From: Ostrea edulis
Taxonomy: Eukaryota
DNA length: 64,000 nucleotides
Assembly (NCBI RefSeq): GCF_947568905.1
Contig: NC_079171.1
Span: 8,680,001-8,744,000 of the forward strand
Reading direction: 5' to 3'
Made by a program: the position numbers and the translations under genes. Under the pieces are notes generated by a model that saw nothing but the letters and a program-made list of their open reading frames with translations, was not told where the DNA came from and made no database searches. Within the stretch, counting starts at the first letter, position 1; each line of letters begins with the position of its first letter. Shown here piece by piece: positions 9,039-57,770 of the stretch.

Positions 9039-10913
9039 ATGGCAACATCCCTAGACAGTTCTTCGATGGAGGATGTTACATTGTGTTCTATATGTTTCGA
9101 AAAGTTCAAGTCGCCGAGGTTTTTACCGTGTACACATTCCTTCTGTCACGGTTGTTTATCTTCCTACATTGTTAATGTGTGTAAATCTACAGAGTTTCGT
9201 TTGGGATTTAATTGTCCATTATGCCGCGAGTACATACCCTGTCCTGGTGCATTCGATACGCCAGATGCGTGGGCGGGGCTATTTCCGTTGAATGAAGTTT
9301 TAGAGACAATCGTTAAGAAACCTGATGGGAAATTGTGTGATGCCTGTTTACGAGAAAACGAAAGTGAAAATGCTATCGGGTTTTGCTTGTCTTGTACTGA
9401 ATATTTATGCAAGGTGTGTACCAAATATCACAAAAGGCAATTGCTCTCAAGAGATCATACCATATGTCAACTGAACGAGATGAAATCTGGCAACATATTT
9501 CCCGAATCAGGGAATATCCATAGCTGCCCAAAACATAAAAGGGAAACTGTCAAATTCTTCTGTAATGATCACCAGCAGTCCTGTTGTTCAGTGTGTATAG
9601 GAACAAGTCACAGAAAATGCGAAAGTATTGATACTGTTGAAGATGCAGCAAAAAATATAAAACAAAATCGCCAACTGGATGTTCTTTTAGGTGATATGAA
9701 GAACGTGGAAAAGAAACTGACAAAAGCAAAGAGCGAACAAGAGATAAATGTAGCAGAAATAGAGAATTCAGTGGACAAAATCATAGAGAAAACAGAAAGG
9801 GAATTCAAGGAACTTGTTGATCACCTAGACATACTGAAGAACAAACATTTAGATGAGGTAGCAGATGCGCTGAAGAAAGGAAGGGGGAAGTTAAGTGAAT
9901 GTACAAATGTACTTACTGATGGTATACAGTGTACAAATTACTGCTGCCGGAATATTGAAAGAGTTAAAGAGACGGAGAATGACGCTGAAATGGTGATGAC
10001 GTATTACAGAGTGAAAGAGAGGCTCTTACAGCTGAAACGGTTTAAATGCACGAAGAAACAGATAACGATATCTGAAAAAAAGTCACAAGTTTTGAAAGAA
10101 ATGAGAAATATGGAATCTTTTGGAGATGTTGAATATGCTGAGTCTGATCGTCGCATCACGTACGATGTAAATGACATTGCGTTATCTTTAGTTAATGAAT
10201 TCAGCATTGATGGAGAAAATCCAATTGTGTGGACTGGGAATTTTCTGTCCAATGGTAACTTTGTATTTGCAGATTACATACCTGATGGACGTTGTTTTAT
10301 TTATAACAAAGACTGGAGATTCACGGAAGTCATTAATAGACTGAGTTACCCTTTTGAAGCAATACAAGCTGGAGAAGAATTACTGGTGACGTGTGATGGA
10401 ACGAAGTCTATAGAAGTTTTTTCTTTGTCTGATTTACATAAACTGCGAAGTATCAAAATCAACGACACAATGTATGGAATAACACAACACAATGGAATTT
10501 GTTATGTAGCATGTGGAAATAAGATTATAAAATTCAATCTGTCTGGTGAAAAACTTAGAGAATATAAAGTCGAAGGCAATTACAATATTCACATAAGTAC
10601 AACAAAAGATGGATATATTGTGTACAGTAACTGTTCCCTGAATACAGTAACTGCCATCACGGACCAGGGAGACACCGTGTGGCAGTATAAACATATCAAA
10701 ATGAAAGTACCCCGTGGACTTGATGTAGACTCTTTCGGTAATATCTTTGTTGCCGCTAGAGGAAGTGACAATATCAACGTGTTGTCTGGCGCTGGCAGTC
10801 TCATTAGGATTATCGAGGATATTCCACAGCCAATGTGTATTAAACTAATGGAGGAGAGGAGTGTGTGTTGTGTGTGTAGCAATCGCAGAATCATGAAAGT
10901 GTATAAACTGTAG
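9039..10913 (+). CDS. TRIM E3 ubiquitin ligase, copy 1 (RING-B1-B2-CC-NHL-like propeller), 624 aa, intronless CDS
   Basis: C3HC4 RING (CSIC...CTHSFCHGC...CPLC), B-box1 (CDAC...CLSC...C...H), B-box2 (CPKH...C.DH...C..C....H), coiled coil, C-terminal PRGLDVDSFGNIFVA repeat. ATG 9039 (aagATGG context) matches the start of all paralogs; the track's 8901 start is a GTG. Confidence 0.93.
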   Translation: MATSLDSSSMEDVTLCSICFEKFKSPRFLPCTHSFCHGCLSSYIVNVCKSTEFRLGFNCPLCREYIPCPGAFDTPDAWAGLFPLNEVLETIVKKPDGKLCDACLRENESENAIGFCLSCTEYLCKVCTKYHKRQLLSRDHTICQLNEMKSGNIFPESGNIHSCPKHKRETVKFFCNDHQQSCCSVCIGTSHRKCESIDTVEDAAKNIKQNRQLDVLLGDMKNVEKKLTKAKSEQEINVAEIENSVDKIIEKTEREFKELVDHLDILKNKHLDEVADALKKGRGKLSECTNVLTDGIQCTNYCCRNIERVKETENDAEMVMTYYRVKERLLQLKRFKCTKKQITISEKKSQVLKEMRNMESFGDVEYAESDRRITYDVNDIALSLVNEFSIDGENPIVWTGNFLSNGNFVFADYIPDGRCFIYNKDWRFTEVINRLSYPFEAIQAGEELLVTCDGTKSIEVFSLSDLHKLRSIKINDTMYGITQHNGICYVACGNKIIKFNLSGEKLREYKVEGNYNIHISTTKDGYIVYSNCSLNTVTAITDQGDTVWQYKHIKMKVPRGLDVDSFGNIFVAARGSDNINVLSGAGSLIRIIEDIPQPMCIKLMEERSVCCVCSNRRIMKVYKL

Positions 10914-11778
10914 ATTTTGTTAATTTTGTCGTAATAAAATATTCAGAAAAAAATCAACATTAATGTTTATATGAAAATTGTCTTATCCATATACATTGCT
11001 AGTATTACCTCCATTCTAGGAAACTTTGTCATCTCACAAGAATACTAATGAGTATCAGCTGTAATTTGTTCTGCCTTAAATTACAGGCACATTACACCGT
11101 TTTTCAGATAAAAGTAAAGGTTAGCCTAAAATTCTTGATAAGGAATGGAAAATTCCAACTTAACTTTCAACTACCGTGGGTGGTATGGAGAAGTGACGGT
11201 GGAATTTTGAAACTTAAAACTCATAAACTAAAATTGCCTAAATAAATTTGCCGAAACTCCAATTTCTTAAAGGGGTGGAACTCATCCGTTTAATTCATAA
11301 CTTTTACACTTTTATTTTTCTCTTTCACTACTGCTATCCAAATAATGGTAGAGACGACAGTAGGCACCCAATTATGATACATCTTTATTTACATATGTAG
11401 GGTATCAAAGATTTTGGATTTGTTTTAGCATAAACAATATTTGGTCTGGTCTATCTAATTGTCCAATTAGTTCTGTTATTGAAGTTAATGTGAAGATTTG
11501 CTCCTGTGTCAATGCTTTAAACTATGGATACAATGCTAGATATATGGGATCTCACATGATTCGTGATTTGATGCGACTTATATTCAACGAGTTGTGTGTT
11601 TTCTCTCCCTGAGACACAAACCATGAGATATTCTTTTTATCACATGTCAACCCCTAAGGCTATTCATTTATGTTGCTGTATTGTTGAGAATTTTACTTTC
11701 TGACATGTAAAACTGACGTTTATTTGTGACGTCGCAAACGGTGTTGGAAATGATAGGTTGCATGTATGTAGTGATATA

Positions 11779-11995
11779 TGCAAGGTGAAGACAACGAACA
11801 GTGATCAGTTCTTTAGAATTTTTTAGAATCCACATTTCATTAACACAACTTCTGGCATATGTAGTCGCACAGTAAGTTTGAAGTTTCTCCTTCACAGCTG
11901 TTAACATTTTCGTGAGGAGCAAAGATAGGGGCTTGGTAGAGCACTTACTGGATCCAGCAATGTATTGAACACAGGAGTAAACATCTGATAAATGT
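11779..11995 (-). mobile_element. Internally deleted PLE (RT N-terminal piece joined to 3' terminus)
   Basis: Minus strand encodes YIAGSSKCSTKPLS...KLQTYCATTYARSCVNEMWILKNSKEL, overlapping the 5' end of the 49-50 kb RT, then jumps to the terminal gatcactgttcgttgtcttcaccttgca. Confidence 0.75.
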
Positions 11996-14461
11996 CGTGG
12001 ACAACATACTGACGGGAATGGACTGATGTGTGATGATAATTTGAATATTTCTTCATGTGGGACAGAACATGTTGACATTTTCCATTCTACATAATATTCT
12101 AAATCATTACAGTTTGTCATTCTTTCTGTTTTCATGTCCTAGGAATACTTTAATGTTGCATGTATTACATTTTCACGGATAACCGTGCTAGAATGGGATA
12201 AATGATCAAATCACAGAAACAAATTACATATTTATTTGGTATACAACTAAAATTTAAGTTTCTGGTCCCGGTTTATGGCGTTGAGCCTAAACTTCCTCAA
12301 AGGCGTCTGGCTTAAACTCAGATCCACTATGCTTATGACTGCTGTCATACGTAGACACAACAAATATATCGATCCTCCCCATTGTTTGGTTTTCATACTG
12401 TTGTACTTGGTACACATTGATTTGGTACACACTAAAAGATAGTACCTACGGCAATAAAGTCATATAAACGTACACATACACACAGGTGTTCAGGTTGAAA
12501 CCTTACTTTACATTATCCATGGATAAATCCCACCATACACCGCTATACATATCAGTTACTTCATATTATAACAAGATACACAAAACTCTAGCAATTCTAT
12601 GCATATGAGTTACTCAATACGTTTCTTACAGCGAAACAATTATGGCCAGTACTAACGCCGTAACTTTACAAACAGGACTATGTAGCGAACACGTTTATGA
12701 AAAAGAAAACCGATATTGAAACAATCACAAAACACATAACTAAATAAAGATAGTTGGAAGCTTTAGGACCTTTTTAACAAAAAAAAAATACTATATAAAG
12801 ATCATTACATAAAAGTCACCTCAAAACAAGCTGAAAACGGGCAACATTTACAGCAAAGTGTCTGCAGTAGTTAATTTGTAATTGCTGTCACAACATTCTG
12901 TTGAAAGTGTGATAAGATGAATGCGTCCATCTTGCATGACAGCTCGATTCCTACTGAGAGCACGGACTGGCGGTTTTATGCTCCAATAGATTGGGATTTA
13001 ATAAAGGGGTATTTACAATTTAAAAGAAGCCCCAAGCAGGATAAAACTACGTTTTGTTTGACAAGACAAAACTGAACTAAAATTGAACATATAAATAAAA
13101 TTGAAAGTGACATACATCATGTCAATGTTTGTGTGTAAACTATTGACAGTTTTATGTACAAAGTGAGAAAACTCAAGAGAAAATGTTATGGAACTGCCTC
13201 GTAGTCCCAGACAGGATAAAACATTAAATTCATATACTATACTATATGATAGTCTGTATGTTCGGATTTTGCAATGGTAATATTTTTCTGTTTGAAACAA
13301 GGTTTATATCTCAATCACTGTCTGATAGGCATGAAACGAAGAAGTCGTCAGTGCTATTTCACACATATATTCTTTATTTGTATTGTGTATTGTTGATGTA
13401 GTACTGTTTTTGTTGTGTGAAAGCTACGTAGGGATCTTAACATGGAACGGAAGTGAATAGATACGAAAGGGCAAATATACCAATTGATTATAATTGTAAA
13501 AATTACTGGTCGATTATTCGTTCATTTAAATAGCGTTCATTTATCAATGATGAAGCATGTAAAACTCTAGTAAACTCGCTAGTTACATCCAGATTAGATT
13601 ACGGAAATGCATTGATCTATGATGTTCATTCTCAACACACCAGCACATTTCAGAGGGCACAAAACACAGGTGCAATATTAATAACACGCTCAAAAATAAT
13701 TCGACCATATTACTCCTGTTCCAATAGATCTTCAGTGGCTCCCAGTTGAATACAGAATTCAATGTAAGATACTTCTTCATACTTTCAAATTTCTCAACAC
13801 CCTATCTCCAGTTTACATAAAGAATATCCTGTAGTTTACAATCCCACAAAATCACTAAGATCCGAATCTCTGCATCTTCCCGAGGTACCTCGGACACGTA
13901 CGAAAACATATGGGAATTGACGTTTAGACAAGGCTGCATCGAGTCTCTCGAACTCACTGTTTTTTAAACTCAGACAATGTCTTTCACTGTCTAGTTTTAA
14001 AGTGGACCCCAAAACGCATTTATTTTATATTAGCTTTTAATTTGTGATTATTTTTATATACTTAGTGCCCTCACATACAAAAAAAACCTTGTCGTTTGTT
14101 ATTACACCTATGTACTTTCTATGTATTTAATTATTACTATGGCTTGTTTTAAATTGTTTCATATGTTATTAGGGTGATCATATCATTACATTGGGTGCTA
14201 TATATTAATATAATAATTATGCATTTTAATTCTGACACTAAGGATATTTTATTCACATGAATGTGCAAATCGATTTTATATTATCTTTTCTTTCACATTT
14301 GTAAAGAGAACTAATGTTGATAGGGCGCTATATAAATCGTTTCATTACAATTACAATTAACATGCAACGGAAGTGAATAGATGCGAAAGAGCGAATATGC
14401 CAATTTATTATAAATGTAAATATTACCGGTCGATTCTAAGTCTTAAAAAATAAATATATTG

Positions 14462-15130
14462 TCTTAATGGCTATTTTAATGTATCTATGTCAACACGTGT
14501 GATGCTGGATCTTATTGGTTATTTTAGTGTATGTATATCAACACGTGTAATGTTGGTTCTTATTGGTTATTTTAGTGTATCTATATCAACACGTGTGGTG
14601 CTGGATCTTATTGGTTATTTTAGTTTATCTATATCAACACATGTGATGCTGGATCTTATTGGTTATTTTAGTGTATCTATATCAACACGTGATGCTGGAT
14701 CTTATTGGTTATTTTAGTGTATATATATCAACACGTGTAATGCTGGTTCTTATTGGTTATTTTAGTGTATCTATATCAACACGTGTGGTGCTGGATCTTA
14801 TTGATTATTTTAGTTTATCTATATCAACACATGTGATGCTGGATCTTATTGGTTATTTTAGTGTATATATATCAACACGTGTAATGCTGGTTCTTATTGG
14901 TTATTTTAGTGTATCTATATCAACACGTGTTGTGCTGGATCTTATTGGTTATTTTAGTTTATCTATATCAACACACGTGATGCTGGATCTTATTGTTTAT
15001 TTTAGTGTATCTATATCAACACGTGTAATGCTGGTTCTTATTGGTTATTTTAGTGTATATATATCAACACCTGTGATGCTGGATCTTATTGGTTATTTTA
15101 GTGTATCTATATCAACACGTGTGATGCTGG
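14462..15130 (+). repeat. 48-bp minisatellite, about 14 units, with a 3-unit higher-order pattern
   Basis: Unit tatcaacacgtgtgatgctggatcttattggttattttagtgtatcta; three variant units recur in the same order three times. Confidence 0.95.
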
Positions 15131-15182
15131 TTTCATTAATTTGGATAGTAACGACAAAATAATAATCAATAATAACAATGTT

Positions 15183-17150: not shown

Positions 17151-18100
17151 TTTGTTTTACTTTTCCGATGGTGAAATCATGCTTTATACAAAATGCTTAT
17201 ACGAGGCATTGGATGATATATTAGTTTAATGAACCACTTAATTTTTTTTCTAAATCTTACATGTAGGTATACAGTGGTGAACTTAAGGTGTCCCCCTCCT
17301 TAATTTTTCAAATTTAAGGGTCTCTTGTTTATAAAAAATGTAAACGATAAAAGAAGCAATAATTTCTTCCACTCTCGGCGAAATAAATGACAAAATCTTT
17401 TGATTTATTGAATTACTTTTATTGGGAGAACGTACATTTTTTCCCCAAAACCCTTACAATTTGCGTATTTGTTTTTAACTTCACCTCATTTAAAATGACA
17501 GAAAATAGTTCAAATGACTAGATAAGAGATATATTTCAAGTGCTAAAAAATCTGTAAATTCCAAGAGCTCACGGGGGCTTCGCACCGTGGGTCTCCACCA
17601 ACGTGGCCAACAGACCTCCTGCCTCGTTGACTTGCGCCTCCATAAATGCAATTCCTGGATCCGCCCTTGGTATATACATTTTTAGGAAGTTCCGAAATTT
17701 TAAAAACTGCGTTTGCGTCTAAATTTAGTATTTCTAATCTTGGAATACCAATACATGAACTGTCATCAGTGTACCACTATATATTAAATTAGCCTGTATA
17801 TCGAATTTAAACCTTAGCCTTCTAAAATTAAATTAGGCCTACTTATGTCCCACATAGCTTTCCATCTTTCTGAATACTCTACCTACATGTACGTCACTTT
17901 TGTTCCGTTTCTGGAGACATTTTCTGCACGTCGATGTTGCGGACAGTTTAGACTCTAGATCTACAAGGACGGTGAAATGTGTGCCTTTTGTGCTTGTTGA
18001 CAAGGATAATATCGACAATCGATATTTCATCAACACAAATTCCATTTGTTTCGGAAAATTCAGAACACCGAGGTTACAACGGGTTCACCGAATTTGACAT

Positions 18101-18112
18101 GAAACCGAAAGT
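18101..18112 (+). promoter_or_regulatory. ISRE/IRF-E upstream of TRIM copy 2
   Basis: GAAACCGAAAGT is a perfect match to the IRF-E consensus G(A)AAA(G/C)(T/C)GAAA(G/C)(T/C); 20 nt before the ATG. Confidence 0.65.
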
Positions 18113-18131
18113 TGATTTGTAATTTATAAAG

Positions 18132-20005
18132 ATGGCAACATCACTAGACAGTTCTTGGATGGAGGGTGTTACATTGTGTTCTATATGTTTCGAAAAGTTC
18201 AAGTCGCCGAGGTTTTTACCGTGTACACATTCCTTCTGTCACGGTTGTTTATCTTCCTACATTGTTAATGTGTGTAAATCTACGGAGCCTCGTTTGGGAT
18301 TCAATTGTCCATTATGCCGTGAGTACATTCCCAGTCCTGGAGCCTTCGATAAGTCAAACGAGTGGGCGGGGCTATTTCCGTTGAATGAAGTTTTAGAGAC
18401 AATCGTTAAGAAACCTGATGGGAAATTATGTGATACCTGTTTACGAGAAAACGGAAGTGAAAATGCTATCGGGTTTTGCTTGTCTTGTACTGAATATTTA
18501 TGCAAGATGTGTACCAAATATCACAAAAGGAATTTGCGCTCAAACGATCATATCATATGTCAATTGAACAAGATGAAATCCGGCAACATATTTCCTGAAT
18601 CAGGAAATATCCATAGCTGCCCCGAACATAAAAGGGAAACTGTCAAATTCTTCTGCAACGATCACCAGCAGTCCTGTTGTTCAGTATGTATAGGAACAAA
18701 ACACAGAAAATGCGAAAGTGTTGATACTGTCGAAGATGCGGCAAAGCTAATAAAAGAAAATGGCCAACTGGATGTTCTTTTGGGTGATGTGAAGAACCTG
18801 GAAAAAAACTGACAGAAGCAAAGAGCGAACAAGAGAAGACTGTAGCAGAAATAGAGAACTCAGTGGACGAAATCATAGAGAAAACAAAAAGGGAATTCAA
18901 AGAACTTGTTGATCACTTAGAAATACTGAAAAACAAATATTTAGATGAAGTAGCATGTGTCCTGAAGAAAGGAAGGGGGAAGTTAGGTGATTGTACAAAT
19001 GTACTTACTGATGGTATACAGTGTACAAATTACTGCTGCCGGAATATTGAAAGAGCTAAAGAGACGGAAAATGATGCTGAAATGGTAATGATGTATTACA
19101 GAGTGAAAGAGAGGCTCTTGCAGCTGAAACAGTTTAAATTCACAAAGAAAAAGATAACGATATCAGAAGCGAAGTCACAAGTTTTGAAAAAAGTGAGGAA
19201 TATGAAGTATTTTGGAGATATTGAATATGCTGAGTCTGATGGTCACATCATGTACGATGTACATGACATTGCATTATCTTTAGTTTCTGAATTCAGTATT
19301 GGTGGAGGAAGTCCGAATGTGTGCACTGGGAATTTTCTGTCAAATGGTAACTTTATAGTCGCAAATTACAAATCTGATGGCAATTGTTTTATTTATAACA
19401 AAGACTGGCAATCCACAGAAGTCATTGATGGGCTGCGTTATCCTGTTGAAGCAATACAAGCTGGAGTTGAACTACTGGTGACCTGTTATGGAACGCAATC
19501 TATAGAAGTCTTTTCTGTGGATGATTTACGTAAACTGCGAAGTGTCAATATAAACGAAGCAGTGCATGGAATAACAAAGCACAATGGGGCGTGTTATGTA
19601 GCATGTGGAAGTAAAATTATAAAAATTGATATGTCTGGTAAAAAACTTAGAAAATATAAAGTTGAAGGCAGTAATAATATTTACATAAGTGCAACAAGAG
19701 ATGGACGTCTTGTGTACAGTAACTTGTCCCTTAATACAGTAACCGCCATCACGGACCAGGGAGACACCGTCTGGCAGTACAAACATCTGAAAATGAAACA
19801 ACCCCATGGACTTGATGTAGACTCTGTCGGTAATATCTTTGTTGCCGCTAGAGGAAGTGACAATATCCACGTGTTGTCTGGTGCTGGTACGCTCCTTAGG
19901 ATTATTGAGGATATTTTACTGCCAGTGTTTATTAAACTAATGGAGGAGAGGGGTATATGTTGTGTGTGCAGCAATTTCAAAATCGTGAGAGTGTATAAAC
20001 TGTAG
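18132..20005 (+). pseudogene. TRIM copy 2, 1-nt frameshift in an A7 run (18802-18808); pseudogene or assembly error
   Basis: ORFs 18132-18812 (RING-B1-B2) and 18863-20005 (CC-propeller). Span is 1874 nt; adding one A gives 1875 nt, the length of copies 1 and 3, and restores EKKLT. Confidence 0.85.
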
Positions 20006-32955: not shown

Positions 32956-33902
32956 TAATTAAGAGTTTGTTTTACTTTTACGATGGTGAAATCATGCTTT
33001 ATACAAAATGCTTATACGAGGCATTAGATGAAACACTTTTTCTATAGTCTTACATGTATGTATACAGTGGTAGACTTAAGGCGCCCCCCCCCCCCTCCTT
33101 AAATTTTCAAATTTAAGGATATCTTGTTTATAAAAAAAAAATGTAAACGATAAAAGAAGCAATAATTTCTTCCAGTCTCGGCGAAATAAATGAAAAAATC
33201 TTTTGATTTATTGAATTACTTTTATTTGGAGAACGTACTTTTTTTTTTCAAAACCCTTAAAATTTGCGTCATTTTCTTTTAATTTAATCTCATTTAAAAT
33301 GACAGAAAATAGTTCAAATGACTAGATAAGAGATAATTTTGAGCGTTAAAAAATCTGTAAATTCCAAGAGCTCCTGGGGGCTTCACACCCTGGGTCCACC
33401 AGACCCCCTGCCTCATTAACTTGCGCCTCTATAACTGCAATTCCTGGATCCGCCCTTGGTATGTACATTTTTAGGAAGTTCCGACATTCTGAAAACTGCG
33501 TTTGCGTCTAAATTTAGCATTTCTAATCTTGGAATACCATATACAACTGTCATCAGCGTATCACTGTATTAAATTAGCCTGTATATAAATCGAATTTAAA
33601 CCTTACCCCCCCCCCCCTTAAAATCAGATTAGGCCTACTTATGTTCCGCATAGCTTTCCATCTTTCTGACTACTCTGCCTACGTCACAGTTTTGTCTCAT
33701 TTCTGGAGACAGTTTATGCACGTCGTTGTTGCGGACAGTTTAGACTATAGATCTACAAGGACGGTGAAATGTGTGCCTTTTGTGCTTGTTGGCAATGGCA
33801 ATGTCGACAATCGACACTTCATCAACAGACATCACACTGTGTTCCAATTGTTTCGGAAAATTCAGAACACCGAGGTTACAACGGGTTCGCCGAATTTGAA
33901 AT

Positions 33903-33914
33903 GAAACCGAAAGT
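33903..33914 (+). promoter_or_regulatory. ISRE/IRF-E upstream of TRIM copy 3
   Basis: GAAACCGAAAGT, 20 nt before the ATG. Confidence 0.65.
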
Positions 33915-33933
33915 TGATTTGTAATTCATAAAG

Positions 33934-35808
33934 ATGGCAACATCACTAGACAGCTCTTCGATGGAGGATGTTACATTGTGTTCTATATGTTTCGAAAAGT
34001 TCAAGTCGCCGAGGTTTTTACCGTGTACACATTCCTTCTGTCACGGATGTTTATCTTCCTACATTGTTAATGTGTGTAAATCTACGGAGCCTCGTTTGGG
34101 ATTTAATTGTCCATTATGCCGCGAGTACACACCCTGTCCTGGAGCCTTCGATAAGTCAGACGAGTGGGCGGAGCTATTTCCTGTGAATGAAGTTTTAGAG
34201 ACAATCATTAAGAAACCTGATGGGGAATTATGTGATGCCTGTTTACGAGAAAACGAAAGTGAAAACGCTATCGGGTTTTGCTTGTCTTGTACTGAATATT
34301 TATGTAAGATGTGTACCAAATATCACAAAAGGCAATTACTCTCAAGAGACCATACCATATGTCAATTAAACGAGATGAAATCAGAGAACATATTTCCTGA
34401 ATCAGGAAATATCCACGGTTGCCCTGAGCATAAAAAGGAAACAATAAAATTCTTCTGTAACGAACACCAGCAGTCCTGTTGTTCAGTGTGTATAGGAACA
34501 AAGCACAGAAAATGCGAAAGTGTTGATACTGTCGAAGATGCGGCCAAAAATATAAAAGAAAATGGCCAACTGGATGTACTTCTGGGTGATGTGAAGAACC
34601 TGGAAAAGAAACTGACAAAAGCAAAGAGCGAACAAGAAAAAAATGTAGCAGAAATAGAGAATTCAGTGGACGAAATCATAGAGAAAACAGAAAGGGAATT
34701 CAAAGAACTTGTTGATCACCTAGAAATACTGAAGAACAAACATTTAGATGAAGTAGCAGGTGCCCTGAAGAAAGGTAGGAGGAAGTTAAGTGATTGTGCA
34801 AATGTACTTACTGATGGTAAACAGTGTACAAATTACTGCTGTCGGAATATTGAAAGAGTTAAAGAGACGGAGAATGACGCTGAGATGGTAACTACTTATT
34901 ACAGAGTGAAAGAGAGGCTCTTACAGCTTAAACGGTTTAAATTCACGAAGATAAACATAACGATATCTGAAATGACGTCACAAGTTTTGAAAGAAGTGAG
35001 AAATATGGAATCTTTTGGTGATATTGAATATATTGAGTCTGATCGTCACATCACGTACGATGTACATGACATTGCGTTATCTTTAGTTTCTGAATTCAAT
35101 ATTGCTGGAGGAAATCCGAATGTGTGGACTGGGAATTTTCTGTCAAATGGTAACTTTGTAGTTGCAGACCACAGCAGTAGTGGCTGTTGTTTTATTTATA
35201 ACAAAGACTGGAAATCCACGGAAGTCATTGATGGACTGAGTTACCCTTTTCAAGCAATACAAGCTGGAGAAGAATTACTGGTGACGTGTCATTTAGCGAA
35301 GTCTATAGAAGTTTTTTCTGCGTCTGATTTACATAAACTGCGAAGCATCAATATAAACGAAACAGTGTATGGAATAACAAAACACAATGGAGCGTGTTAT
35401 GTAGCATGTGGAAGTAAAATTATAAAAATTGATATGTCCGGTAAAAACCTTCGAGAATATAAAGTTGAAGGCAATAATAATGTTAACATAAGTGGAACAA
35501 ATGATGGACATCTTGTGTACAGTAACTGGTTCCTTAATACAGTAACCGCCATCACGGACCAGGGAGACACCATCTGGCAGTATAAGCATCTCAAAATGAA
35601 ACAACCCCGTGGACTTGATGTAGACTCTGTCGGTAATATCTTTGTTGCCGCTGAACAAAGTAACAATATCCATGTGTTGTCTGGTGCTGGTACACTCCTT
35701 AGGATTATCGAGGATATTCCACAGCCAGTGTTTATTAAACTAATGCAGGATAGGAGTATGTGTTGTGTGTGTAGCAATCGCAAAATAATGAAAGTGTATA
35801 AACTGTAG
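33934..35808 (+). CDS. TRIM E3 ubiquitin ligase, copy 3, 624 aa, intact and intronless
   Basis: Same domain order as copy 1; uninterrupted ORF; AATAAA at 35828-35833. Confidence 0.93.
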   Translation: MATSLDSSSMEDVTLCSICFEKFKSPRFLPCTHSFCHGCLSSYIVNVCKSTEPRLGFNCPLCREYTPCPGAFDKSDEWAELFPVNEVLETIIKKPDGELCDACLRENESENAIGFCLSCTEYLCKMCTKYHKRQLLSRDHTICQLNEMKSENIFPESGNIHGCPEHKKETIKFFCNEHQQSCCSVCIGTKHRKCESVDTVEDAAKNIKENGQLDVLLGDVKNLEKKLTKAKSEQEKNVAEIENSVDEIIEKTEREFKELVDHLEILKNKHLDEVAGALKKGRRKLSDCANVLTDGKQCTNYCCRNIERVKETENDAEMVTTYYRVKERLLQLKRFKFTKINITISEMTSQVLKEVRNMESFGDIEYIESDRHITYDVHDIALSLVSEFNIAGGNPNVWTGNFLSNGNFVVADHSSSGCCFIYNKDWKSTEVIDGLSYPFQAIQAGEELLVTCHLAKSIEVFSASDLHKLRSININETVYGITKHNGACYVACGSKIIKIDMSGKNLREYKVEGNNNVNISGTNDGHLVYSNWFLNTVTAITDQGDTIWQYKHLKMKQPRGLDVDSVGNIFVAAEQSNNIHVLSGAGTLLRIIEDIPQPVFIKLMQDRSMCCVCSNRKIMKVYKL

Positions 35809-48400: not shown

Positions 48401-48912
48401 CCTTTATCATTACCCAAAAGACTGTTTACAATATATAGATTATTATTCACACAAAAATCTATCAATTTATAACCAAAATTATTAGTTGAGGTATCCTGCG
48501 CTGTTCTGACTGCGGAGATATTGATATTGTCAAAAAATGATAAAATATCAATATTTTCAATTTCAACAGAATTACATTGTTTGACATTTGTTAAAAAATC
48601 ATCCACTTCAACAAAATCATTTAATTTTCCAATTCTCGAGTTGAAATCTCCCATCAAACATACATATTTACACTCTCTACTTATATTGATTGATTCGTGT
48701 TCAATCTCAACATAACAATCAGGAGATGAGTATTTACTTCCTTCAGGAGGGATGTATACAGCACCGAAATAAATATCTTCATCAATATTAAACAGTGATT
48801 TGTTCATTTTAAACCAGGATACATATTTACAATTTGTGTTAATTACTGTGACACACTTCACAAGTGAATCTCTAAACAGCAAAGCAATGCCACCAGATCT
48901 AACTTTTGATAG
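45488..48912 (-). mobile_element. 5'-truncated, inactivated LINE (APE endonuclease, RT, C-terminal CCHC); clade not resolved
   Basis: APE motifs (GGIALL, YIPP, GDFNSR, SD.H), RT motifs (KAP, YRPITLL, QAGFR, DFKQAFD, GVRQG, LYADD), C-terminal CxxC...HYILEC; several stops and two 1-nt frameshifts; AATAAA plus (GAACTT)n tail at the 3' end. Confidence 0.9.
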
Positions 48913-50087
48913 TGCAAGGTGAAGATAACGAACAGTGATCAATCTCATAATTCCTACAAGCAATACAAAATAGATAGTTGGGCAAACACGGACCCTGGAC
49001 ACACCAGAGGTGGGATCAGGTGCCTAGGAGGAGTAAGCATCCTCTGTTAACCGGTCACACCCGCAGTGAGCCCCATATCCTGATCAGGTAAACGGAGTTA
49101 TCCTCAGTCAAAATCAGTGTGCCAAGAACGGCTTAACAATCGGTATGAAACACGTCAGACAGCATTTGACCCAATGCGATGTTGTATTGACGAACTAGAT
49201 CGTTATAACGATCATAGAATTTGCGAAATGCTGACTTCAATCGAGACTGTTGAAATTCCTGTACCATCAACTTGTTTGTCAGTAGCTTACCTCGATTTAA
49301 AAACTGACTATACCCAGAACAAGTTCTTGCATATCGAATCAGTTGAGATATATAAACACCATATGCAGGTGATCATGGAATATTGCTACATAAATGTGGG
49401 AAGTTTACAATGGAGAAGCTGAAATCATCCCGTTTGTCATACAGTTGAGTTGTTAGTTTGCCGTTAATGTCTACATTCAATAAAATATCCAAGTATGAAG
49501 CAGAAGTGGACGACTTTGTGGTATCCTTTATTTCGAGCTCACAGGGATATATCAAATCGACATATGAATGAAAGTTATCATTGTTAATAGACAAAACGTC
49601 ATCGATATATCTAAAAGTCGAATTGAAGGTCACAGCGAGAGATTTTTTCTTTTCACGTAGAAGTTTTTGAATAAATTATGCTTCATATGAATATAAAAAC
49701 AGGTCAGCTAACAAAGGAGCACAATTCGTGCCCATGGGAATTCCAACAGACTGTTGGAAGACCTGATCACCAAAGACCACGAAGATATTGTCAATGAGGA
49801 ACTCTAGCATATTTTTTATTTCAACTTCAGAGTACTTGTGCGTGGAATCAGAGTGGTGTTTAACAAAGTAAGTTTTTGAATGACTGATCACTAGATATGA
49901 ATATTTCCGTTTTCCGTTTTTGTTGAAGAAGCAACTGTCTATGATGTCAAAAAGTCTAGTCTTTAATTTATCGTGAGGAATGGTCGTGTATAGTGTTGAA
50001 AAGTCATAGGTTTTAATGCTATTGATTTGGGGAAAATTCTGTGATTTCAAGTTTACTAAAAGTTCTTTAGAATTTTTTAGAATCCAC
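48913..50087 (-). mobile_element. Penelope-like element: RT core, thumb and 3' UTR (possibly Naiad/Chlamys type, RT at the C-terminus)
   Basis: One frame 50087-49133 with two nonsense codons: TYDFSTLYTTIPH, GIPMGTNCAPLLADLFL, FRYIDD, YDKRDDF, AYGVYISQLIRYAR; ORF ends VFHTDC* with no GIY-YIG after the thumb. Confidence 0.82.
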
Positions 50088-51520: not shown

Positions 51521-52308
51521 TAATTGGTCTTGCTATTTAAATCAATATGAATATTTGCTCCTGGGTTAATGTTAGAAATGTAAGAATTTGTTTTCGTGCA
51601 ATAAGGGAGCTCCACCTTAATGCAATTTTGTACACCCACATTCTGTCTTTAAAATGAAGGAATTTGTCATTTCGTTCTCCGGTTGGAGATGAGTTCTTAT
51701 TCAGCCAAACACTTATCTAATCTATGTGTGCCTGTTATTTACATATATGTTTCTCCTTAACCACAGGGCCACAGTCAGATAATTTTATAAACTTAAAGCA
51801 TTTAGGCACGGATCTAGTAAAAATCAATTTCAGGAAGCGAACTCCTCCATCTAAACAAAAATTATAATTGAAATTGAATGGTCTGCGAATAAATCTAGTG
51901 TTTCTAATTTTGGAATATCAATACATTAATTAACTGTCACCCATGTATCGTCGTGTTAAATTATTCTTTATATAAATACAAACCAAACCTTAACCAGCAC
52001 CCCGCCCCAAAAAAGGATTAGGTATATTTATGTCCCACATAGCTTTCCATGTCTCTGAATACTCTGCCTACGTCACAGTTTTGTCCCGTTTCTGAAGACA
52101 TTTTCAGTGTGTGTTTTCTGCACGTCGGTGTTGCGGACATTGTATTCTCTATATCTACACGGACAGTGAAATTTATGATTTATGTGCTTTTTGGCATGAC
52201 AACGTCGACCATCGACTCTTCATTTACAGATGCAAACATAATGTGTTCCATTTGTTTCGAAAAAGAAGTTGAACGTCCAGGTTACGACAAATTCGCCAAA
52301 TTTGAAAT

Positions 52309-52320
52309 GAAAGCGAAAGT
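52309..52320 (+). promoter_or_regulatory. ISRE/IRF-E upstream of TRIM copy 4
   Basis: GAAAGCGAAAGT, 20 nt before the ATG. Confidence 0.65.
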
Positions 52321-52339
52321 TGGTTTGTAATTTATAAAG

Positions 52340-54208
52340 ATGGCAACATCACTAGACAGTTCTTCGATGGAGGATGTTGCATTGTGTTCTATATGTTTCG
52401 AAAAGTTCAAGTCGCCGAGGTTTTTACCGTGTACACATTCCTTCTGTCACGGTTGTTTATCTTCCTACATCGTGAGCTTGTGTAAATCTACGGAGACTCG
52501 TTTGGGATTTAATTGTCCATTATGCCGTGAGTATACGCCCAGTCCTGGCGCCTTCGATAAGCCACACGAGTGGGCGGGGCTTTTTCCTGTGAATGAAATG
52601 TTGAGGAAAATTGTAGACAAATCAGACCAATTGCTTTGTGAGCCATGCTTGAGAGAAAAAGAAGAAGAGGAGGCCTCGGACTACTGCTTTTCATGTTTAG
52701 AACATTTATGCAAAATATGTACGAAATGCCACAGGAAGAATATGTCGTCACGAGACCACAAAGTATCTCCACTAAATGAACTGAAATCGGCGAACAGAAC
52801 ATCCATTGTTGATATCTCAAACAGCTGTGCCACCCATAAGGATGAAAAGATTAGGTTATATTGCTTTGATCACGAACAGCCCTGTTGCGCAATGTGTGGT
52901 GGCATGGAGCATAGGAGATGTGAGCAGTTTGACACTATTGAAAATGCTGTACATGTTTTTAAGGAAAGTGGCAAGGTTGACTCCATTATGGATGATGTAA
53001 ACAAATTTAAAAGTAAATTAGAAAAGGCCAAAGACGAAGAAGAGAAGAATATAACGGAAATCGAAAATTCGGTTGATGAAATGATAGCAAGATCGGAAGA
53101 GGATTTTAAAACTCTTCTTGACCACTTACAGAAATTGCAACATGAACATATAGAAGAAATATCCAGTTCTCTGAAGAAAAGCAAGGAAAAATTGCAAACA
53201 TGCATAGGCACCTTAACGGATGGAATACAATGTGCAGAGTATTGCAGCAAAATGTTTGAACAAGCCCGAATCAGTGAATATGAAACGGAGTTCATAATGA
53301 AGTTTCATACGTCGAAAATAACGTATGAACATTTAAAACACGTGAATTTTTCACGAAAGCGCATCATGATTTCTGCAAAAAAGGATCCTATTTTGACGGA
53401 AATCTTGAATATGACAGCTCTCTCTGACGTTCACCATACCGAATCCTCTCGTCAACTTTATTTTGATGTTCGAACTGTAGAAATGTCTTTAATAAAGGAA
53501 TTTAGCATTGATGGGGATGTCGTGTGCGATGGTATATTTCTGTCTAATGGCACTTTTGTGATAGCGGATTACAGAGATGATGGGAAATGCATGTTTTTGG
53601 ACAAACATTGGGTCCCCAGTATATTTGGTTAAAGTCTTAAGAAACCATTTGGTTTGATAGAAAACGATGAAGAAGTTCTTGTGACTTGCAGCGGCTCAAA
53701 AAGTATTGAAGTATTTTCTTCATCAGATTTACAGAAACTTCGAAGTATTCCCATGACTGAATCAGTTTTTGGAATAACAAACCGGAGGGGTGACATATAT
53801 GTTGCGTGTGGAAAGAAAATCATTAAAATCGATAGCGTGGGTAGGATATTGAAAATATACGATGTAGAAGGGGCAAATAATGTAAATATACTTGCAACAA
53901 GCACTGGACTTATTGTGTACAGTGATTGGAAAATAGAAAAAGTGACAGCGATAACCGATCAGGGAGACATTGTCTGGAAGTATAAAAATCGTAACCTGAA
54001 ATGTCCATGTGGAATCGATCAAGACTCTGTCGGTAACATATACGTTACAGGAACAGATAGCAATAACGTCCACGTGTTGTCTGGAACCGGGGAACTTATT
54101 AGGGTGTTCGAAGACATCCCGAGCCCGACATTCTTTAAATTAAATGAAGAGAGGGGCATTATATGTGCTTTTGATATATCAAAACGCATAAGAGTGTTTG
54201 AAGTTTAA
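52340..54208 (+). pseudogene. TRIM copy 4 (divergent), in-frame TAA at 53630-53632; pseudogene or assembly error
   Basis: ORFs 52340-53632 and 53654-54208 are in the same frame (1869 nt total) and align collinearly with the paralogs across the stop. Confidence 0.85.
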
Positions 54209-54249
54209 GTTTCCCAGGAACATGACATTACATTGATTCTGAACAACAG

Positions 54250-54317
54250 TCCTATTGTATATTGTATTCCTTATAGGAGTTATGAGATTGATCGCTGTTT
54301 GTTATCTTCACCTTTCC
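54250..54317 (+). mobile_element. PLE 3' terminal fragment
   Basis: ttgtattccttataggagttatgagattgatcgctgtttgttatcttcacctttc. Confidence 0.75.
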
Positions 54318-55696
54318 TATAAAATGTTAGCTGCGCTAATGCAGCCCTCTCCGATTATTTCTTTCTTTCTTTTTGAGGGGGCTACAACTCCTTAGGATCT
54401 CCGTAATGGTGCAAATGCGAGAGTGATTCACTCCCGCAACATTTTCGATCATTTTAAACATTTGCTGACTTCCATTACGTAATTGAAATGCTATTCTCTA
54501 TTTCTTAGTCAATATATGAATTTACAACCTGCAACTTTTCGATGTATTCCAATTTCTTGATTCATATTTGTGTGCCATCTTTGATGTACTGAAGTTTCAA
54601 CTTCCAGTTGTCAAATTATTTGCATATGCCATATAAGGTAGTGTTTACATCAATGGACGAGCACGGAGGTGAAAGCGATTTCGTCGGTATTAAAATATCA
54701 AGTTAAAAAGCAACAGCAGAGTGTACGTTTCTCGGCCACCACATGATTTGTCCTTTTTTGTCGGAATGACTCAAGTAACTACATTTTCGCGCTGATTGTC
54801 AATGTTGAGGTTTTTCAGTAGATTTACTGACGAGATCTCACGATAATAAGCATGGCATAGCAAACCAAGAATCTTGAATGTTGTAAATATATTTAATTAA
54901 AAACACCTTTCTCAAACAATAATCAATCAATCATTCAAACATGCCCAAGCACAAAGTCGGTAGTATTTATTGTGTAAACAACAGCATTTGATACAAATAC
55001 AAGGATTTTATTAAAGGTTATTCATTAAAAAAATATTGGCATCATTACGAAGATCCCGTGGACTTCTAGCCCTATCCTGAAAACGTCTGAATAAAAAAGG
55101 AGAGGATTAGATTATTGCAGAATATAAAATGTCAAACAATCTATTTAAAACATTCGTTGCTCATCAAAAACACTCAGGACATAGCGAATCAAAGTTGATA
55201 TTGATAGAAATAAAACATGTGAAATTGATATTAATCTTTTTTCCCGATTTAACCTTTTCAGAATGATTATCAGGCCCTTCCCTAACCTGTAAAATATGTA
55301 ATTAAAGTGAATAAAGTATCTCTTGACTGTGTGTCAATTAACATTCAAGTGTTATTTTATGAAATTAGTCGTCACTATTTCTTGGTATTTATTTTTCGCC
55401 GAGATATTGACATTTCGTAGTTAGCCATTTACGAAATTTGTCCCTGCATTATGTTTATGCCCGGACTAAGAATGCAAGTTTTATCACTCGTGTATATACT
55501 TAGTTTTGCTCAGTCGGAAATATACGATAGAACAATCATATAGACGAAAAGTGACACTGCTTGCTGTGAAAAATACCATCAAGCCCATGACTCTTGTCCG
55601 TTCGTACCGTGTTAGAGTTGAAATATCACATCAGAACAAAACGCACGCCATACAAGTGCAAATCAGATGTTCGTTATCTCCATTTGTTCATTCTTT

Positions 55697-55747
55697 TTAA
55701 TTAACAACTACAATTAATTAACAACTACAATTAATTAACAACTACAA
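55697..55747 (+). repeat. 17-bp tandem repeat x3
   Basis: ttaattaacaactacaa x3. Confidence 0.9.
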
Positions 55748-55875
55748 TACTACAGAGAATCAAAGTTTCATATTTGTTCTTTATATCCAACATTTGAACA
55801 TATAGAAAAAAATACTATTCTAATGTTCTGCATAAACTTCACTGTTATCACAACACTGAGAGAGGAGCGCTGGGA

Positions 55876-57770
55876 TTATTTGAATTCGTACACTTTGATG
55901 TGTTTTCGATTGCTACACACGCAACATGTATTTCTCGCTTTGTTTATTTTCATAAAGTATGGTCTCGGAATGTCCTCAAAAAGTCGAATTAATTTGCCTT
56001 CACTGGACAACACATGGACATTGTCACTGGATTTACCAGCGACATAGATATTACCATCAGAGTCCGTGTCAAGGCCACACAGAAATTTAAGATGTGGACT
56101 GTCGCATTTCCACACGGTTTGACCTCCGTCTGTTACGACGTGTGTTTTTCTGTTACTGTATATTATGTGTTTTTTCGTGGCGACGATGTGCTTCACGCCA
56201 GTCTCTGCGCTGTACTCTTTCATTATTCTTTCATACTCGTTTATCTTCACGATTTTGTCATTGCATGCATAGTAAAAGTAAGCATCCTTCTTTGCTATTC
56301 CAAAGTTTTTGTGAAGACTGGTGAATATCATATTTGATGATTTGGAATAAGAGTAAAGTGATACCCTTTCAATGGATCTTGAACCGTGGCATGCCACTAA
56401 TAATTCTCGTGCCTTTTCACACAGACCGAAAGGTTCTGAAGACAAGTCAATGGATCTTGTGCACGCAAACACTTTGTTATAAAAGAAGCATTTACCATTG
56501 TTGCTCCTTTTACAACCCCGCCTTTTTGTCGACAGCCATGATAGAACGAACTCTCCATTTGATAAAAACGTACCATCACATACGCAGCCTGCATCAATGC
56601 TAAAATGATTTAATAAAGATAACTCAACTCTTCTCAGATCAGACTTGACATCAAATAGGGACTCTGAAAATACTGCACCAGGAAAACTTTCAAGATCCAT
56701 GATATCTTCCAAAATAGGATCCTTTCCTTCCTTAAGCCCTATGCGTATTTGTGTAAATTCGTAATTTTTGAGTTGTTCAAATATTTTTCTGCTTTTATAG
56801 TACTTCACAACCATATCGATGTCATCCTGACTTTTTCTACAATCCTCAATATTTCTGTAACAGTAATCTGTGCATTGAATTCCATCTGATAGCGTGTCTA
56901 TGCATTTTTCGTATTTTTCTTTATTTCTCTTTACAGCGGTAGCCATTTTTGTTAGATACTCATTTTTCAGATGCTGCAAGTGATCGATAGCAACCCGAAA
57001 TTCTCTCGTGGTATTCTCTGTAATCTGGTCTGCTTTATCATCCATTCTGTAACGAACCTTTCTTGTTCCTTCTTTGCATCTACTAATTTGTTTTCAAGAA
57101 TATGTATGTCTTCAGACAGGCTGTCGAAATTATGACTAAGAATCTCTCTGAGAGTCTCAGCAGTTTTCTTTATAGCATCAACACTTTCACATTTTCTGTG
57201 TTCCGTACTGACACACATTGCACAGCATGGCTCTTCGTGATCGTTGCAAAATAGCTCTAGTTTTCTATCCTGATGTGTTGAACACATATTTTCTCTACCA
57301 ATTCTCGGTGTAATATTCATTCCTTTCATTTTATTCACTGGTACTGTCTTATGGTCAAGTGTTGTTAGACTTCTTTTATGATATTTTGTACACAATTTGC
57401 ACAAATATTCCATGCAAAAGAAACAAAAATCGGTTGCATACTCTACTTCGCTCTGTCGTAAGCAAGTCTCGCATTGTGTTTGTTCTGATTCCTGTAAAAG
57501 TTTTCCTAATACTTCGTTTTCAGGGAAAAGTTCTGCCCACTTCTCTGGCTCACCCAAGGCATTATCAATGGGAATGTACTCACGGCATAATGGACAATTA
57601 AATCCCAAACGAGGCTCCGTAGATTTACACACATTATCAATGTAGGAAGATAAACACTTGTGACAGAAGGAATGTGTACACGGTAAAAACCTCGGCGACT
57701 TGAACTTTTCGATACATATCGAACAAAATGTAACATCCTCCGTTGTAGAGCTGTCTAGTGAAGTTGCCAT
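55876..57770 (-). pseudogene. TRIM copy 5 (most divergent, inverted), 1-nt frameshift at about 57045; pseudogene or assembly error
   Basis: ORFs 57770-56967 and 57045-55876. GAATGG would need to be GAA ATG G to give EQERFVTEMDDKADQI, which aligns with EQEINVAEIENSVDKI; 1895+1 nt is divisible by 3. Confidence 0.85.

What the first reader, a model, noticed from the sequence alone, without database searches (positions are those of the whole stretch)
9099..57710. Promoter-plus-RING cassette homogenised across otherwise divergent TRIMs
Seen: the 51-nt stretch gaaaagttcaagtcgccgaggtttttaccgtgtacacattccttctgtcac (17 codons, every synonymous site included) is identical in all five genes (e.g. 9099-9149 and 57710-57660), and the surrounding ~200 nt of RING plus upstream DNA is near-identical. 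B-boxes, coiled coil and propeller of copies 4 and 5 are strongly diverged from copies 1-3. Protein constraint cannot fix synonymous sites. Inference: ongoing gene conversion or cassette grafting keeps one inducible promoter/E3 catalytic module on a diversified set of recognition modules, a constant-plus-variable design for an innate immune receptor family. An overlapping RNA/DNA-level signal is the alternative.
Basis: partly seen in the sequence, partly recalled or inferred. Interest (0 to 1): 0.78.

Follow-up and report, generated by a model that had tools for sequence, protein, structure and literature searches.

The report
Shared front end on oyster TRIM genes
In a flat-oyster cluster of TRIM-NHL ubiquitin-ligase genes, two anciently diverged gene lineages carry the promoter, leader and RING finger of a third lineage; this is real patchwork ancestry from past copy-to-copy recombination, an ordinary process in tandem gene families, and there is no sign that it is still going on.

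Summary
The 51-mer is exact at all five stated places. The window is Ostrea edulis OX387711.1, 8.680-8.744 Mb, and holds five intronless RING/B-box/coiled-coil/NHL-propeller genes. Copies 4 and 5 differ from copies 1-3 ("group A") at 73-80% of synonymous sites in the gene body, which is saturated, but at only 13-26% in the RING.

Body trees place copy 5 with Saccostrea P0028/P0033. They place group A with Saccostrea P0012/P0014, and copy 4 with a third oyster clade. All O. edulis copies nevertheless share about 465 nt of promoter, a relic duplicate of the gene start, an ISRE-like GAAANNGAAA site and the RING. Saccostrea paralogs share none of this upstream DNA.

Breakpoints are sharp and differ between the two lineages: CDS nt 259 for copy 4 and about nt 200 for copy 5. 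That implies at least two separate replacements of the 5' module by ectopic recombination.

"Ongoing homogenisation" is not supported:
- Within group A, RING dS equals body dS.
- Each lineage has its own fixed cassette differences, shared by its three duplicates.
- The 51-mer is changed in 3 of the 13 copies examined.

No RNA-level signal was found. Inducibility and immune function remain untested. This is a clean new example of a known process. Neighbouring windows of this scan had already noted the ISRE-like site.

The parts
9039..10913 (+). c1, group-A TRIM-NHL gene, intact. Its ORF also runs upstream to GTG 8901 because the leader uORF stop is lost.
   Evidence: ORF list; Pfam RING and B-box; tblastn
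18132..20005 (+). c2, group-A gene with a 1-nt frameshift in an A-run at about 18807-18808
33934..35808 (+). c3, group-A gene, intact, 624 aa. Residues 370-624 (35041-35805) fold as a 6-bladed NHL propeller.
   Evidence: AlphaFold pLDDT 95.4; Foldseek TM 0.84 to the TRIM2 NHL domain 7qrv
52340..54208 (+). c4, c4-type gene. Its body is orthologous to a different oyster clade. In-frame TAA at 53630-53632.
55876..57770 (-). c5, c5-type gene. Its body groups with Saccostrea P0028/P0033. 1-nt deletion at 57044/57045.
51880..52598 (+). Grafted 5' module of c4, about -460 to CDS nt 259: promoter, relic, leader, RING and linker up to the WAGLFPVNE motif
   Evidence: promoter homology to c2/c3/e8; max-chi2 breakpoint at nt 259, 0/500 permutations
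57571..57960 (-). Grafted 5' module of c5, contiguous from about -190 to CDS nt ~200. It ends just after the CPLCREY motif. Weaker homology patches reach about 58225.
   Evidence: max-chi2 breakpoint at nt 197-203, 0/500 permutations
33469..34131 (+). Reference copy of the shared 5' module in c3 (-465 to +198). Homologous blocks lie at 8574-9236 (c1) and 17667-18329 (c2).
   Evidence: alignment of 9-13 copies; this DNA is found only upstream of TRIM copies
33994..34044 (+). The 51-mer (codons 21-37, EKFKSPRFLPCTHSFCH). Also at 9099-9149, 18192-18242, 52400-52450 and 57660-57710(-).
33795..33878 (+). Relic tandem duplicate of the start codon plus the first ~28 codons (in c4 the match also takes in the leader), about 70% identical to the live copy. 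Also at 8925-8991, 18040-18089, 52144-52284 and 57813-57908(-).
   Evidence: local alignment score 41-54 versus shuffle maximum 34-36; coordinates checked
33903..33912 (+). ISRE/IRF-like core GAAANNGAAA, 31 or 29 nt before the ATG, inside a short uORF. Also at 9008-9017, 18101-18110, 52309-52318 and 57790-57799(-).
   Evidence: present in all 13 O. edulis copies, with variation only at the NN positions

Best explanation
The five genes belong to three ancient TRIM-NHL lineages (group A = c1-c3, c4-type, c5-type) that separated before Ostrea and Saccostrea split. Later, in the Ostrea lineage, the 5' module of group A was copied onto a c4-type gene and, separately, onto a c5-type gene. The module is a ~465-nt promoter with a relic duplicate of the gene start, a leader with an ISRE-like site, the start codon and the RING. 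The copying was homology-guided ectopic recombination: either interlocus gene conversion or a Lepore-type unequal crossover. The junctions fall in frame at the ends of two conserved motifs, after CPLCREY (nt ~200) in c5 and after WAGLFPVNE (nt 259) in c4. Afterwards the chimeric genes diverged normally. Neutral sites in the module accumulated about 0.1-0.3 changes per site, while purifying selection on the zinc-binding RING held non-synonymous sites. Together these give about 93-99% nucleotide identity and runs such as the 51-mer. The convergent c4/c5 pair was then triplicated with its surrounding block. What is shown: the mosaic ancestry, the breakpoints, and the order of events. What is inferred: the molecular mechanism, group A as the donor, and any selective benefit.
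For: (1) Synonymous contrast. The module has 5-10 synonymous differences over 42-55 sites and the body has 240-260 over about 320, Fisher P 1e-13 to 1e-17. Four-fold sites agree. (2) Body tree. c5 groups with Saccostrea P0028/P0033, group A with P0012/P0014, and c4 with a third oyster clade, all at 99* support. The AU test rejects O. edulis monophyly for the body, p = 1e-45. (3) RING trees put all O. edulis copies in one cluster: 90/93 at protein level, with Saccostrea P0014 intruding, and 94/95 at DNA level including j9. (4) About 465 nt of promoter homology and the relic duplicate are shared by all 13 O. edulis copies. There is no promoter homology to or among the Saccostrea paralogs. (5) Breakpoints are sharp, distinct, and the same against every group-A comparator: nt 259 and nt 197-203. 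(6) Saccostrea paralogs show no contrast between RING and body (RING pS 0.59-0.83), so synonymous sites of this RING are not generally constrained. (7) Timing. Module pS between lineages is 0.12-0.30, about the same as body pS within group A (0.11-0.24). Both exceed the divergence between block duplicates (c4 0.07-0.08, c5 about 0.015). (8) Donor. JGI contigs j9 and j10 have group-A-like bodies (pS 0.42-0.48) and a related cassette (pS 0.28-0.38), so the cassette has co-diverged with group-A bodies.
Against: Topology tests on the RING alone are underpowered. The AU p-values for forcing the body-tree groupings onto RING data are 0.04, 0.068, 0.083 and 0.128. The direction of transfer rests on indirect evidence, because no c4-type or c5-type gene with a native RING was found in Ostrea. 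The distal promoter (-470 to -135) is more diverged between some group-A copies (0.40-0.60) than between c4 and c2/c3 (0.17-0.34). This points to more exchange events than the two counted, or to poor non-coding alignment. The 51-mer run is somewhat longer than expected (P 0.003-0.04). Only about 230 kb of the genome was sampled.
Confidence: 0.72

Rival explanations
1. Ongoing concerted evolution. Recurrent gene conversion, possibly favoured by selection, continually re-homogenises the promoter and RING across all subfamilies. The result is one regulatory and catalytic module kept on variable recognition modules.
For: Identity peaks at the RING core and decays in both directions. The 51-mer run is mildly over-long. 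Upstream haplotypes are shuffled relative to the bodies. Other conversion-like mosaics exist in the cluster: c4 versus c4b, 5' body pS 0.11 versus NHL 0.02, P = 0.003, and e7 versus e8, 3' end 3.4% versus 11.9%.
Against: Within group A the RING is no more similar than the body at four-fold sites (15 pairs, none showing the RING significantly more similar than the body; the two lowest P values, 0.03 and 0.06, have the RING more diverged). The c4-type and c5-type cassettes form tight private clades (100/99 and 99/96) with fixed differences shared by three copies. The differences between c4 and its siblings are evenly spread and split about 6-7 versus 9 between the two branches. There is no clear GC3 excess.
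Confidence: 0.15
2. A nucleotide-level functional element overlaps the RING codons and holds the 51-mer's synonymous sites. Candidates are an RNA structure, a small-RNA target, or a DNA binding site.
For: Seventeen consecutive codons are invariant in 10 of 13 copies, with permutation P 0.003-0.04.
Against: There is no Rfam match and the 336-nt leader plus RING folds no better than shuffles, z = +0.69. The same codons are saturated at synonymous sites among the Saccostrea paralogs and between genera. e7, c4b and c4c, and the JGI copy j9 (4 changes, 3 of them synonymous) carry substitutions inside it. The low divergence extends 460 nt upstream and to CDS nt 259, far beyond the 51-mer.
Confidence: 0.05
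3. An assembly or polishing artefact has pasted one consensus RING onto different gene bodies.
For: In four independent short-read contig sets the contigs break at the cassette, and depth there is about 5 times higher. This shows the cassette is a repeat that short reads cannot bridge.
Against: The junctions are in frame. They are reproduced in three separate c4-type and three c5-type copies with lineage-specific differences. An independent JGI contig carries a related cassette joined to a body. The cassette copies are not identical to each other.
Confidence: 0.02

Closest known systems
Domain-specific gene conversion in zebrafish NLR-B30.2 genes (Howe et al. 2016, PMC4852459)
   Same: A large tandem family of putative innate sensors. 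Different parts of the gene have different synonymous divergence between subfamilies, and this is read as conversion acting on only part of each gene.
   Different: In zebrafish the conversion is inferred to be ongoing, and it homogenises or shuffles the NACHT and B30.2 exons. Here the shared part is the promoter, leader and RING of intronless genes. The pattern fits a few dated events followed by ordinary divergence.
Lepore-type hybrid genes from unequal crossover between tandem paralogs, such as delta-beta globin, red/green opsin and CYP11B1/B2 (my own knowledge, not looked up here)
   Same: A chimeric gene with the promoter and 5' coding part of one paralog and the 3' part of another, joined in frame at a stretch of homology.
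   Different: Those are recent, polymorphic, and occur between close paralogs. Here the partners were already about 40% diverged, the products are fixed and later duplicated, and c5 lies in inverted orientation. Inverted orientation favours conversion, or crossover with inversion.
TRIM-NHL (class VII) proteins: TRIM2, TRIM3, TRIM32, TRIM71, Brat, Mei-P26, Thin
   Same: RING, B-box, coiled coil and a C-terminal six-bladed NHL propeller. TM 0.80-0.85 to the NHL domains of TRIM2, Thin and Brat.
   Different: Sequence identity to those NHL domains is 15-20% and the Pfam NHL model does not hit. No filamin domain was detected. The genes are intronless and expanded in a lineage-specific tandem array. 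RefSeq names them TRIM45-like.
Earlier notes of this scan on ISRE/IRF-like sites before TRIM-NHL start codons in neighbouring windows (s1-301806, s1-279193)
   Same: The same gene cluster and the same GAAANNGAAA motif 17-31 nt before the ATG.
   Different: Those notes concern the motif's conservation. This report shows that the motif travels as part of a transferred 5' module, so its presence on every copy is not independent evidence of selection.

Membership tests
TRIM-NHL E3 ligase family | N-terminal C3HC4 RING finger | tested here: met
   Pfam zf-C3HC4 and zf-RING_UBOX above cut-off in c1, c3, c4 and c5
TRIM-NHL E3 ligase family | B-box zinc finger(s) after the RING | tested here: met
   Pfam zf-B_box above cut-off, with two stretches in c1 and c3; a weak ANCHR-like B-box match at residues 99-141
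TRIM-NHL E3 ligase family | Coiled coil between the B-box and the C-terminal domain | tested here: inconclusive
   Only a sub-threshold TRIM_CC hit, in c4 (16.8 bits against a cut-off of 30). This region was not modelled.
TRIM-NHL E3 ligase family | C-terminal six-bladed NHL beta-propeller | tested here: met
   AlphaFold model of c3 residues 370-624: pLDDT 95.4, 24 strands. Best PDB matches are the NHL domains of TRIM2, Thin, Brat, TRIM3 and TRIM71, TM 0.80-0.85, E about 1e-13.
Interlocus gene conversion / ectopic recombination mosaic | In one tract, paralogs within a genome are closer than the rest of the gene and the orthology relations allow, including at synonymous and non-coding sites | tested here: met
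Interlocus gene conversion / ectopic recombination mosaic | Discrete, statistically supported breakpoints | tested here: met
   Max-chi2 breakpoints at nt 259 (c4) and nt 197-203 (c5), 0/500 permutations, against all six group-A comparators
Ongoing concerted evolution of the RING cassette | Cassette divergence is clearly lower than body divergence, even among close paralogs, and cassettes do not sort by subfamily | tested here: not met
   Within group A the RING equals the body at four-fold sites. The c4-type and c5-type cassettes are private clades.
Ongoing concerted evolution of the RING cassette | GC-biased conversion signature | tested here: inconclusive
   RING GC3 is 0.41-0.48 against 0.34-0.38 in the body. 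The Saccostrea values overlap.
IRF/ISRE-controlled (virus-inducible) gene | ISRE/IRF-E core motif in the proximal promoter or leader | tested here: met
   GAAANNGAAA at -31 or -29 in all 13 O. edulis copies. Not found in the exact form in four Saccostrea paralogs.
IRF/ISRE-controlled (virus-inducible) gene | Transcription induced by virus, dsRNA or IRF | not testable with these tools
   No RNA run holds the stretch. The transcription start site is unknown.

The most novel reading that the evidence does not exclude
The 5' module is a selected, portable unit made of an IRF-type switch, the leader uORFs and one particular RING. On this reading Ostrea has repeatedly moved it onto anciently diverged NHL recognition bodies, bringing them under one regulatory programme and one E2 pairing. 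That would be a germline constant-plus-variable architecture for an invertebrate sensor family. The relic start-duplicate would mark an earlier capture of the same kind.
Probability: 0.15. Interest if true: 0.65.

Novelty: new member of a known kind. Interest (0 to 1): 0.4.

Why it matters
This is a clean, datable case in a mollusc in which the regulatory and catalytic front end of a TRIM gene has a different history from its recognition end. It warns that RING-based trees and promoter-motif conservation in bivalve TRIM expansions cannot be read as independent evidence of orthology or of selection. For example, the ISRE-like site is present on every copy partly because the whole module was copied. 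If the module proves to be virus-inducible, the cluster would be a tractable system for asking whether module transfer rewires the expression of old sensor genes. As it stands, the mechanism is the familiar recombination among tandem paralogs.

Tried and rejected
1. RNA evidence. No RNA run holds the stretch. The four contig runs that were laid cannot show transcription starts.
2. The T insertion behind 57044 in all four runs would restore the c5 reading frame. However, the contigs differ from the window by 1-4%, so they may come from the intact paralogs c5b and c5c. I do not claim that the c5 frameshift is an assembly error.
3. Two scans of metagenome contigs for the cassette, one codon-degenerate and one a 29-mer, found nothing. 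They did not even return the JGI contig already in hand. The cassette's spread in other oysters could therefore not be surveyed.
4. An Rfam search and RNA folding of the cassette gave nothing.
5. GC3 and CpG content as a signature of biased conversion were uninformative.
6. AU tests on the RING alone are borderline or non-significant because there are only 69 amino-acid or 198 nucleotide columns. I rest the case on synonymous and non-coding divergence and on the breakpoints instead.
7. I tested whether the distal promoter is a transposable element. It occurs only upstream of TRIM copies in about 230 kb of sampled DNA, so that idea is rejected.
8. Literature searches found no paper on gene conversion in oyster TRIM genes.
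9. Rapid adaptive divergence of the bodies was rejected as an explanation, because body synonymous sites are saturated and the bodies have cross-genus orthologues.


Full report
**Observation**

The 51-mer is present exactly five times, at the stated coordinates, against none in shuffles. Each copy lies 60 nt into an intronless ORF of about 624 codons. Pfam finds a C3HC4 RING and B-boxes. An AlphaFold model of c3 residues 370-624 (pLDDT 95.4) is a six-bladed propeller. Its best PDB matches are the NHL domains of TRIM2, Thin and Brat, with TM 0.80-0.85. The genes are therefore TRIM-NHL-type E3 ligases.

The window is Ostrea edulis OX387711.1, 8,680,001-8,744,000. It lies inside a TRIM cluster that spans at least 8.456-8.918 Mb.

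In this assembly c1 and c3 are intact. The other three are disrupted:
- c2 has a 1-nt frameshift in an A-run.
- c4 has an in-frame TAA at 53630-53632.
- c5 has a 1-nt deletion at 57044/57045.

**How strong is the contrast?**

Sliding-window identity between c1-c3 ("group A") and c4 or c5 is 93-99% from about -130 to +120 around the 51-mer. It is 50-65% over the rest of the CDS.

| Comparison (c4 or c5 versus group A) | 5' module / RING | Body | Source |
|---|---|---|---|
| Nei-Gojobori pS | 0.13-0.26 | 0.73-0.80 (saturated) | |
| Synonymous differences / sites | 5-10 / 42-55 | 240-260 / about 320 | (Fisher P 1e-13 to 1e-17) |
| Four-fold sites | 0.09-0.33 | 0.56-0.70 | |

Protein constraint cannot produce this.

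**Ancestry of the bodies**

I built a protein tree of residues 80 to the end, using Saccostrea, a third oyster clade from Logan assemblies, and Mytilus as outgroup. All three placements have 99* support:
- c5 groups with Saccostrea P0028/P0033.
- Group A groups with Saccostrea P0012/P0014.
- c4 groups with the third clade.

The AU test rejects a single O. edulis clade for the body, p = 1e-45. The three lineages therefore predate the Ostrea-Saccostrea split.

RING trees instead put all O. edulis copies together. Support is 90/93 at protein level, with the long Saccostrea branch P0014 intruding, and 94/95 at DNA level including the related JGI copy j9. The RING alone is too short for decisive topology tests. 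AU p-values are 0.04-0.13 when the body groupings are forced onto it. I report this as a weakness.

**The module is larger than the RING**

All 13 O. edulis copies examined share homology from about -465 to the ATG. The 13 copies are five in the window; e6-e9 in L001-L003; c4b and c5b in L008; and c4c and c5c in L007. In about 230 kb of sampled DNA this upstream DNA is found only in front of TRIM copies.

The shared upstream region contains two notable features:
- A relic tandem duplicate of the start codon and the first ~28 codons (in c4 the match also takes in the leader). It is about 70% identical to the live copy, with alignment scores of 41-54 against a shuffle maximum of 34-36. In c3 it lies at 33795-33878.
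- An ISRE/IRF-like core, GAAANNGAAA, at -31 or -29. Only the NN positions vary.

Saccostrea paralogs have no promoter homology to O. edulis or to each other. Their RINGs are saturated at synonymous sites, pS 0.59-0.83. The shared module is thus a derived feature of the Ostrea lineage, not an ancient conserved element.

**Breakpoints and number of events**

Maximum chi-square puts the 3' junction of c4 at CDS nt 259, just after WAGLFPVNE. It puts the junction of c5 at nt 197-203, just after CPLCREY. The result is the same against all six group-A comparators, with 0/500 permutations reaching the observed value. The bodies are different ancient lineages and the junctions differ, so at least two transfers occurred.

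Both junctions are in frame and sit at the end of a conserved motif, as expected for homology-guided recombination. Gene conversion and a single unequal crossover cannot be told apart here. c5 is inverted relative to group A, which favours conversion.

**Direction**

Two JGI contigs from an unidentified oyster, L009 (j9) and L010 (j10), have group-A-like bodies (pS 0.42-0.48) and a related cassette (pS 0.28-0.38 to all O. edulis types). This suggests the cassette co-diverged with group-A bodies, which would make group A the donor. This is an inference. No c4-type or c5-type gene with a native RING was found in Ostrea.

**Is it ongoing?**

The evidence says no, or at least not detectably:
- Within group A, four-fold divergence in the RING equals that in the body across 15 pairs.
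- The c4/c5 convergent pair exists three times, at about 8.73, 8.81 and 8.90 Mb.
- The three c4-type cassettes share private fixed differences, and so do the three c5-type cassettes. Each set forms a tight clade, 100/99 and 99/96.
- The differences between c4 and c4b/c4c are evenly spread. Polarised against group A, they split about 6-7 versus 9 between the two branches, as plain divergence predicts.

The order of events by synonymous divergence is as follows:

| Event | pS |
|---|---|
| Split of the three body lineages | ≥0.73, saturated |
| Split from j9/j10 | 0.45 |
| Module transfer | 0.12-0.30 |
| Group-A radiation | 0.11-0.24 |
| Block triplication, c4-type | 0.07-0.08 |
| Block triplication, c5-type | about 0.015 |

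Non-coding divergence of the proximal module (-135 to 0) is about 0.2 between lineages. That matches the RING pS. One transfer age plus purifying selection on RING residues therefore explains the identity peak.

The 51-mer run is only mildly longer than expected (P 0.003-0.04, post hoc). It is altered in e7, c4b, c4c and j9.

Exchange is not special to the RING. Between c4 and c4b, pS is 0.11 in the 5' body and 0.02 in the NHL part (P = 0.003). Several group-A pairs also have internal breakpoints. The distal promoters fall into at least two haplotype classes that do not follow body relationships. This hints at additional older exchanges, although non-coding alignment at 40% divergence is unreliable.

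**Alternative signals**

There is no Rfam match, and the leader plus RING folds no better than shuffles, z = +0.69. GC3 shows no clear biased-conversion signature.

An assembly artefact is unlikely. The junctions recur in three copies per lineage with lineage-specific differences, and an independent contig shows a related cassette joined to a body.

In the four public contig runs the contigs break at the cassette and summed depth there is about 5 times higher. This is consistent with a multi-copy repeat. Those contigs differ from the window by 1-4% and may come from paralogs, so I draw no conclusion about the c5 frameshift.

**Function**

"Inducible" rests only on the ISRE-like motif. Two earlier notes of this scan (s1-301806, s1-279193) report the same motif in neighbouring windows. 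Because the motif is part of a copied module, its ubiquity is not independent evidence of selection. The restriction of variation to the NN positions is suggestive.

No RNA data were available. Several copies, including all three c4-type genes, are broken in this assembly. The array therefore evolves by birth and death.

**Comparison and verdict**

The closest documented parallel is domain-specific gene conversion in the zebrafish NLR-B30.2 family, inferred from the same kind of synonymous-divergence contrast (PMC4852459). Mechanistically, Lepore-type hybrid genes are the simplest analogue; that comparison is from my own knowledge. I found no paper describing this in oyster TRIMs.

The finding is real and well supported as mosaic ancestry. 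It is a new example of a known process. The more ambitious reading, a maintained constant-plus-variable design, is not supported by the present data but is not excluded.

Noticed in passing
window 54100-54900: Between c4 and c5 lies a very high-copy repeat. Summed contig depth is 1e5-1e6, against about 1e2-1e3 in the flanks, in all four public runs, with many joints and loose ends.
   Followed up: no
window 14659-15162: The 167-aa 'ORF' is a tandem array of a ~16-17-residue unit (a 48-51-nt minisatellite), not a gene.
   Followed up: no
window 45915-50050 (-): A string of minus-strand ORFs (416, 138, 141, 256 and 124 aa) that look like a retrotransposon. An earlier first-reader note, s1-302300, calls it a LINE-Penelope chimera. 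I did not test this.
   Followed up: no
window 9006-9041 (c1) versus 18099-18134 and 33901-33936: The leader holds a short uORF, MK(P/A)KVDL-stop, that overlaps the ISRE-like site. In c1 the stop is lost, so the upstream ATG reads in frame into the main ORF. RefSeq models a c1-like paralog this way (P0005 starts MKTKVDLSFIKMATS).
   Followed up: partly
L008:9096-10957 and L007:13042-14903; L008:12650-14551 and L007:9449-11350: The convergent c4/c5 pair is triplicated, at about 8.73, 8.81 and 8.90 Mb. c4b and c4c share a frameshift near residue 241 and a stop, both different from the c4 nonsense codon. c5b is a full-length intact ORF. c5c has a 1-nt insertion near its start. The copies in L007 and L008 differ by only 0.3-1% at synonymous sites, so a haplotypic duplication artefact is not excluded.
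   Followed up: partly
window 52598-54208 versus L008: c4 versus c4b is itself mosaic. Synonymous divergence is 0.11 over residues 87-430 and 0.02 over the NHL part (Fisher P = 0.003). This suggests a recent exchange in the propeller region.
   Followed up: partly
L003:19909-21309 and L001:2102-2658: There are further decayed family members. e9 has an internal deletion of about residues 218-369 but keeps an exact 51-mer. L001 holds a short degenerate RING/B-box fragment. Several RefSeq models of cluster members start at an internal Met and lack the RING (P0006-P0008, P0011, P0013).
   Followed up: no
window 57044/57045: All four public contig runs show an extra T here, which would restore the c5 reading frame. 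The contigs may derive from the intact paralogs c5b and c5c, so the status of c5 is unresolved.
   Followed up: partly
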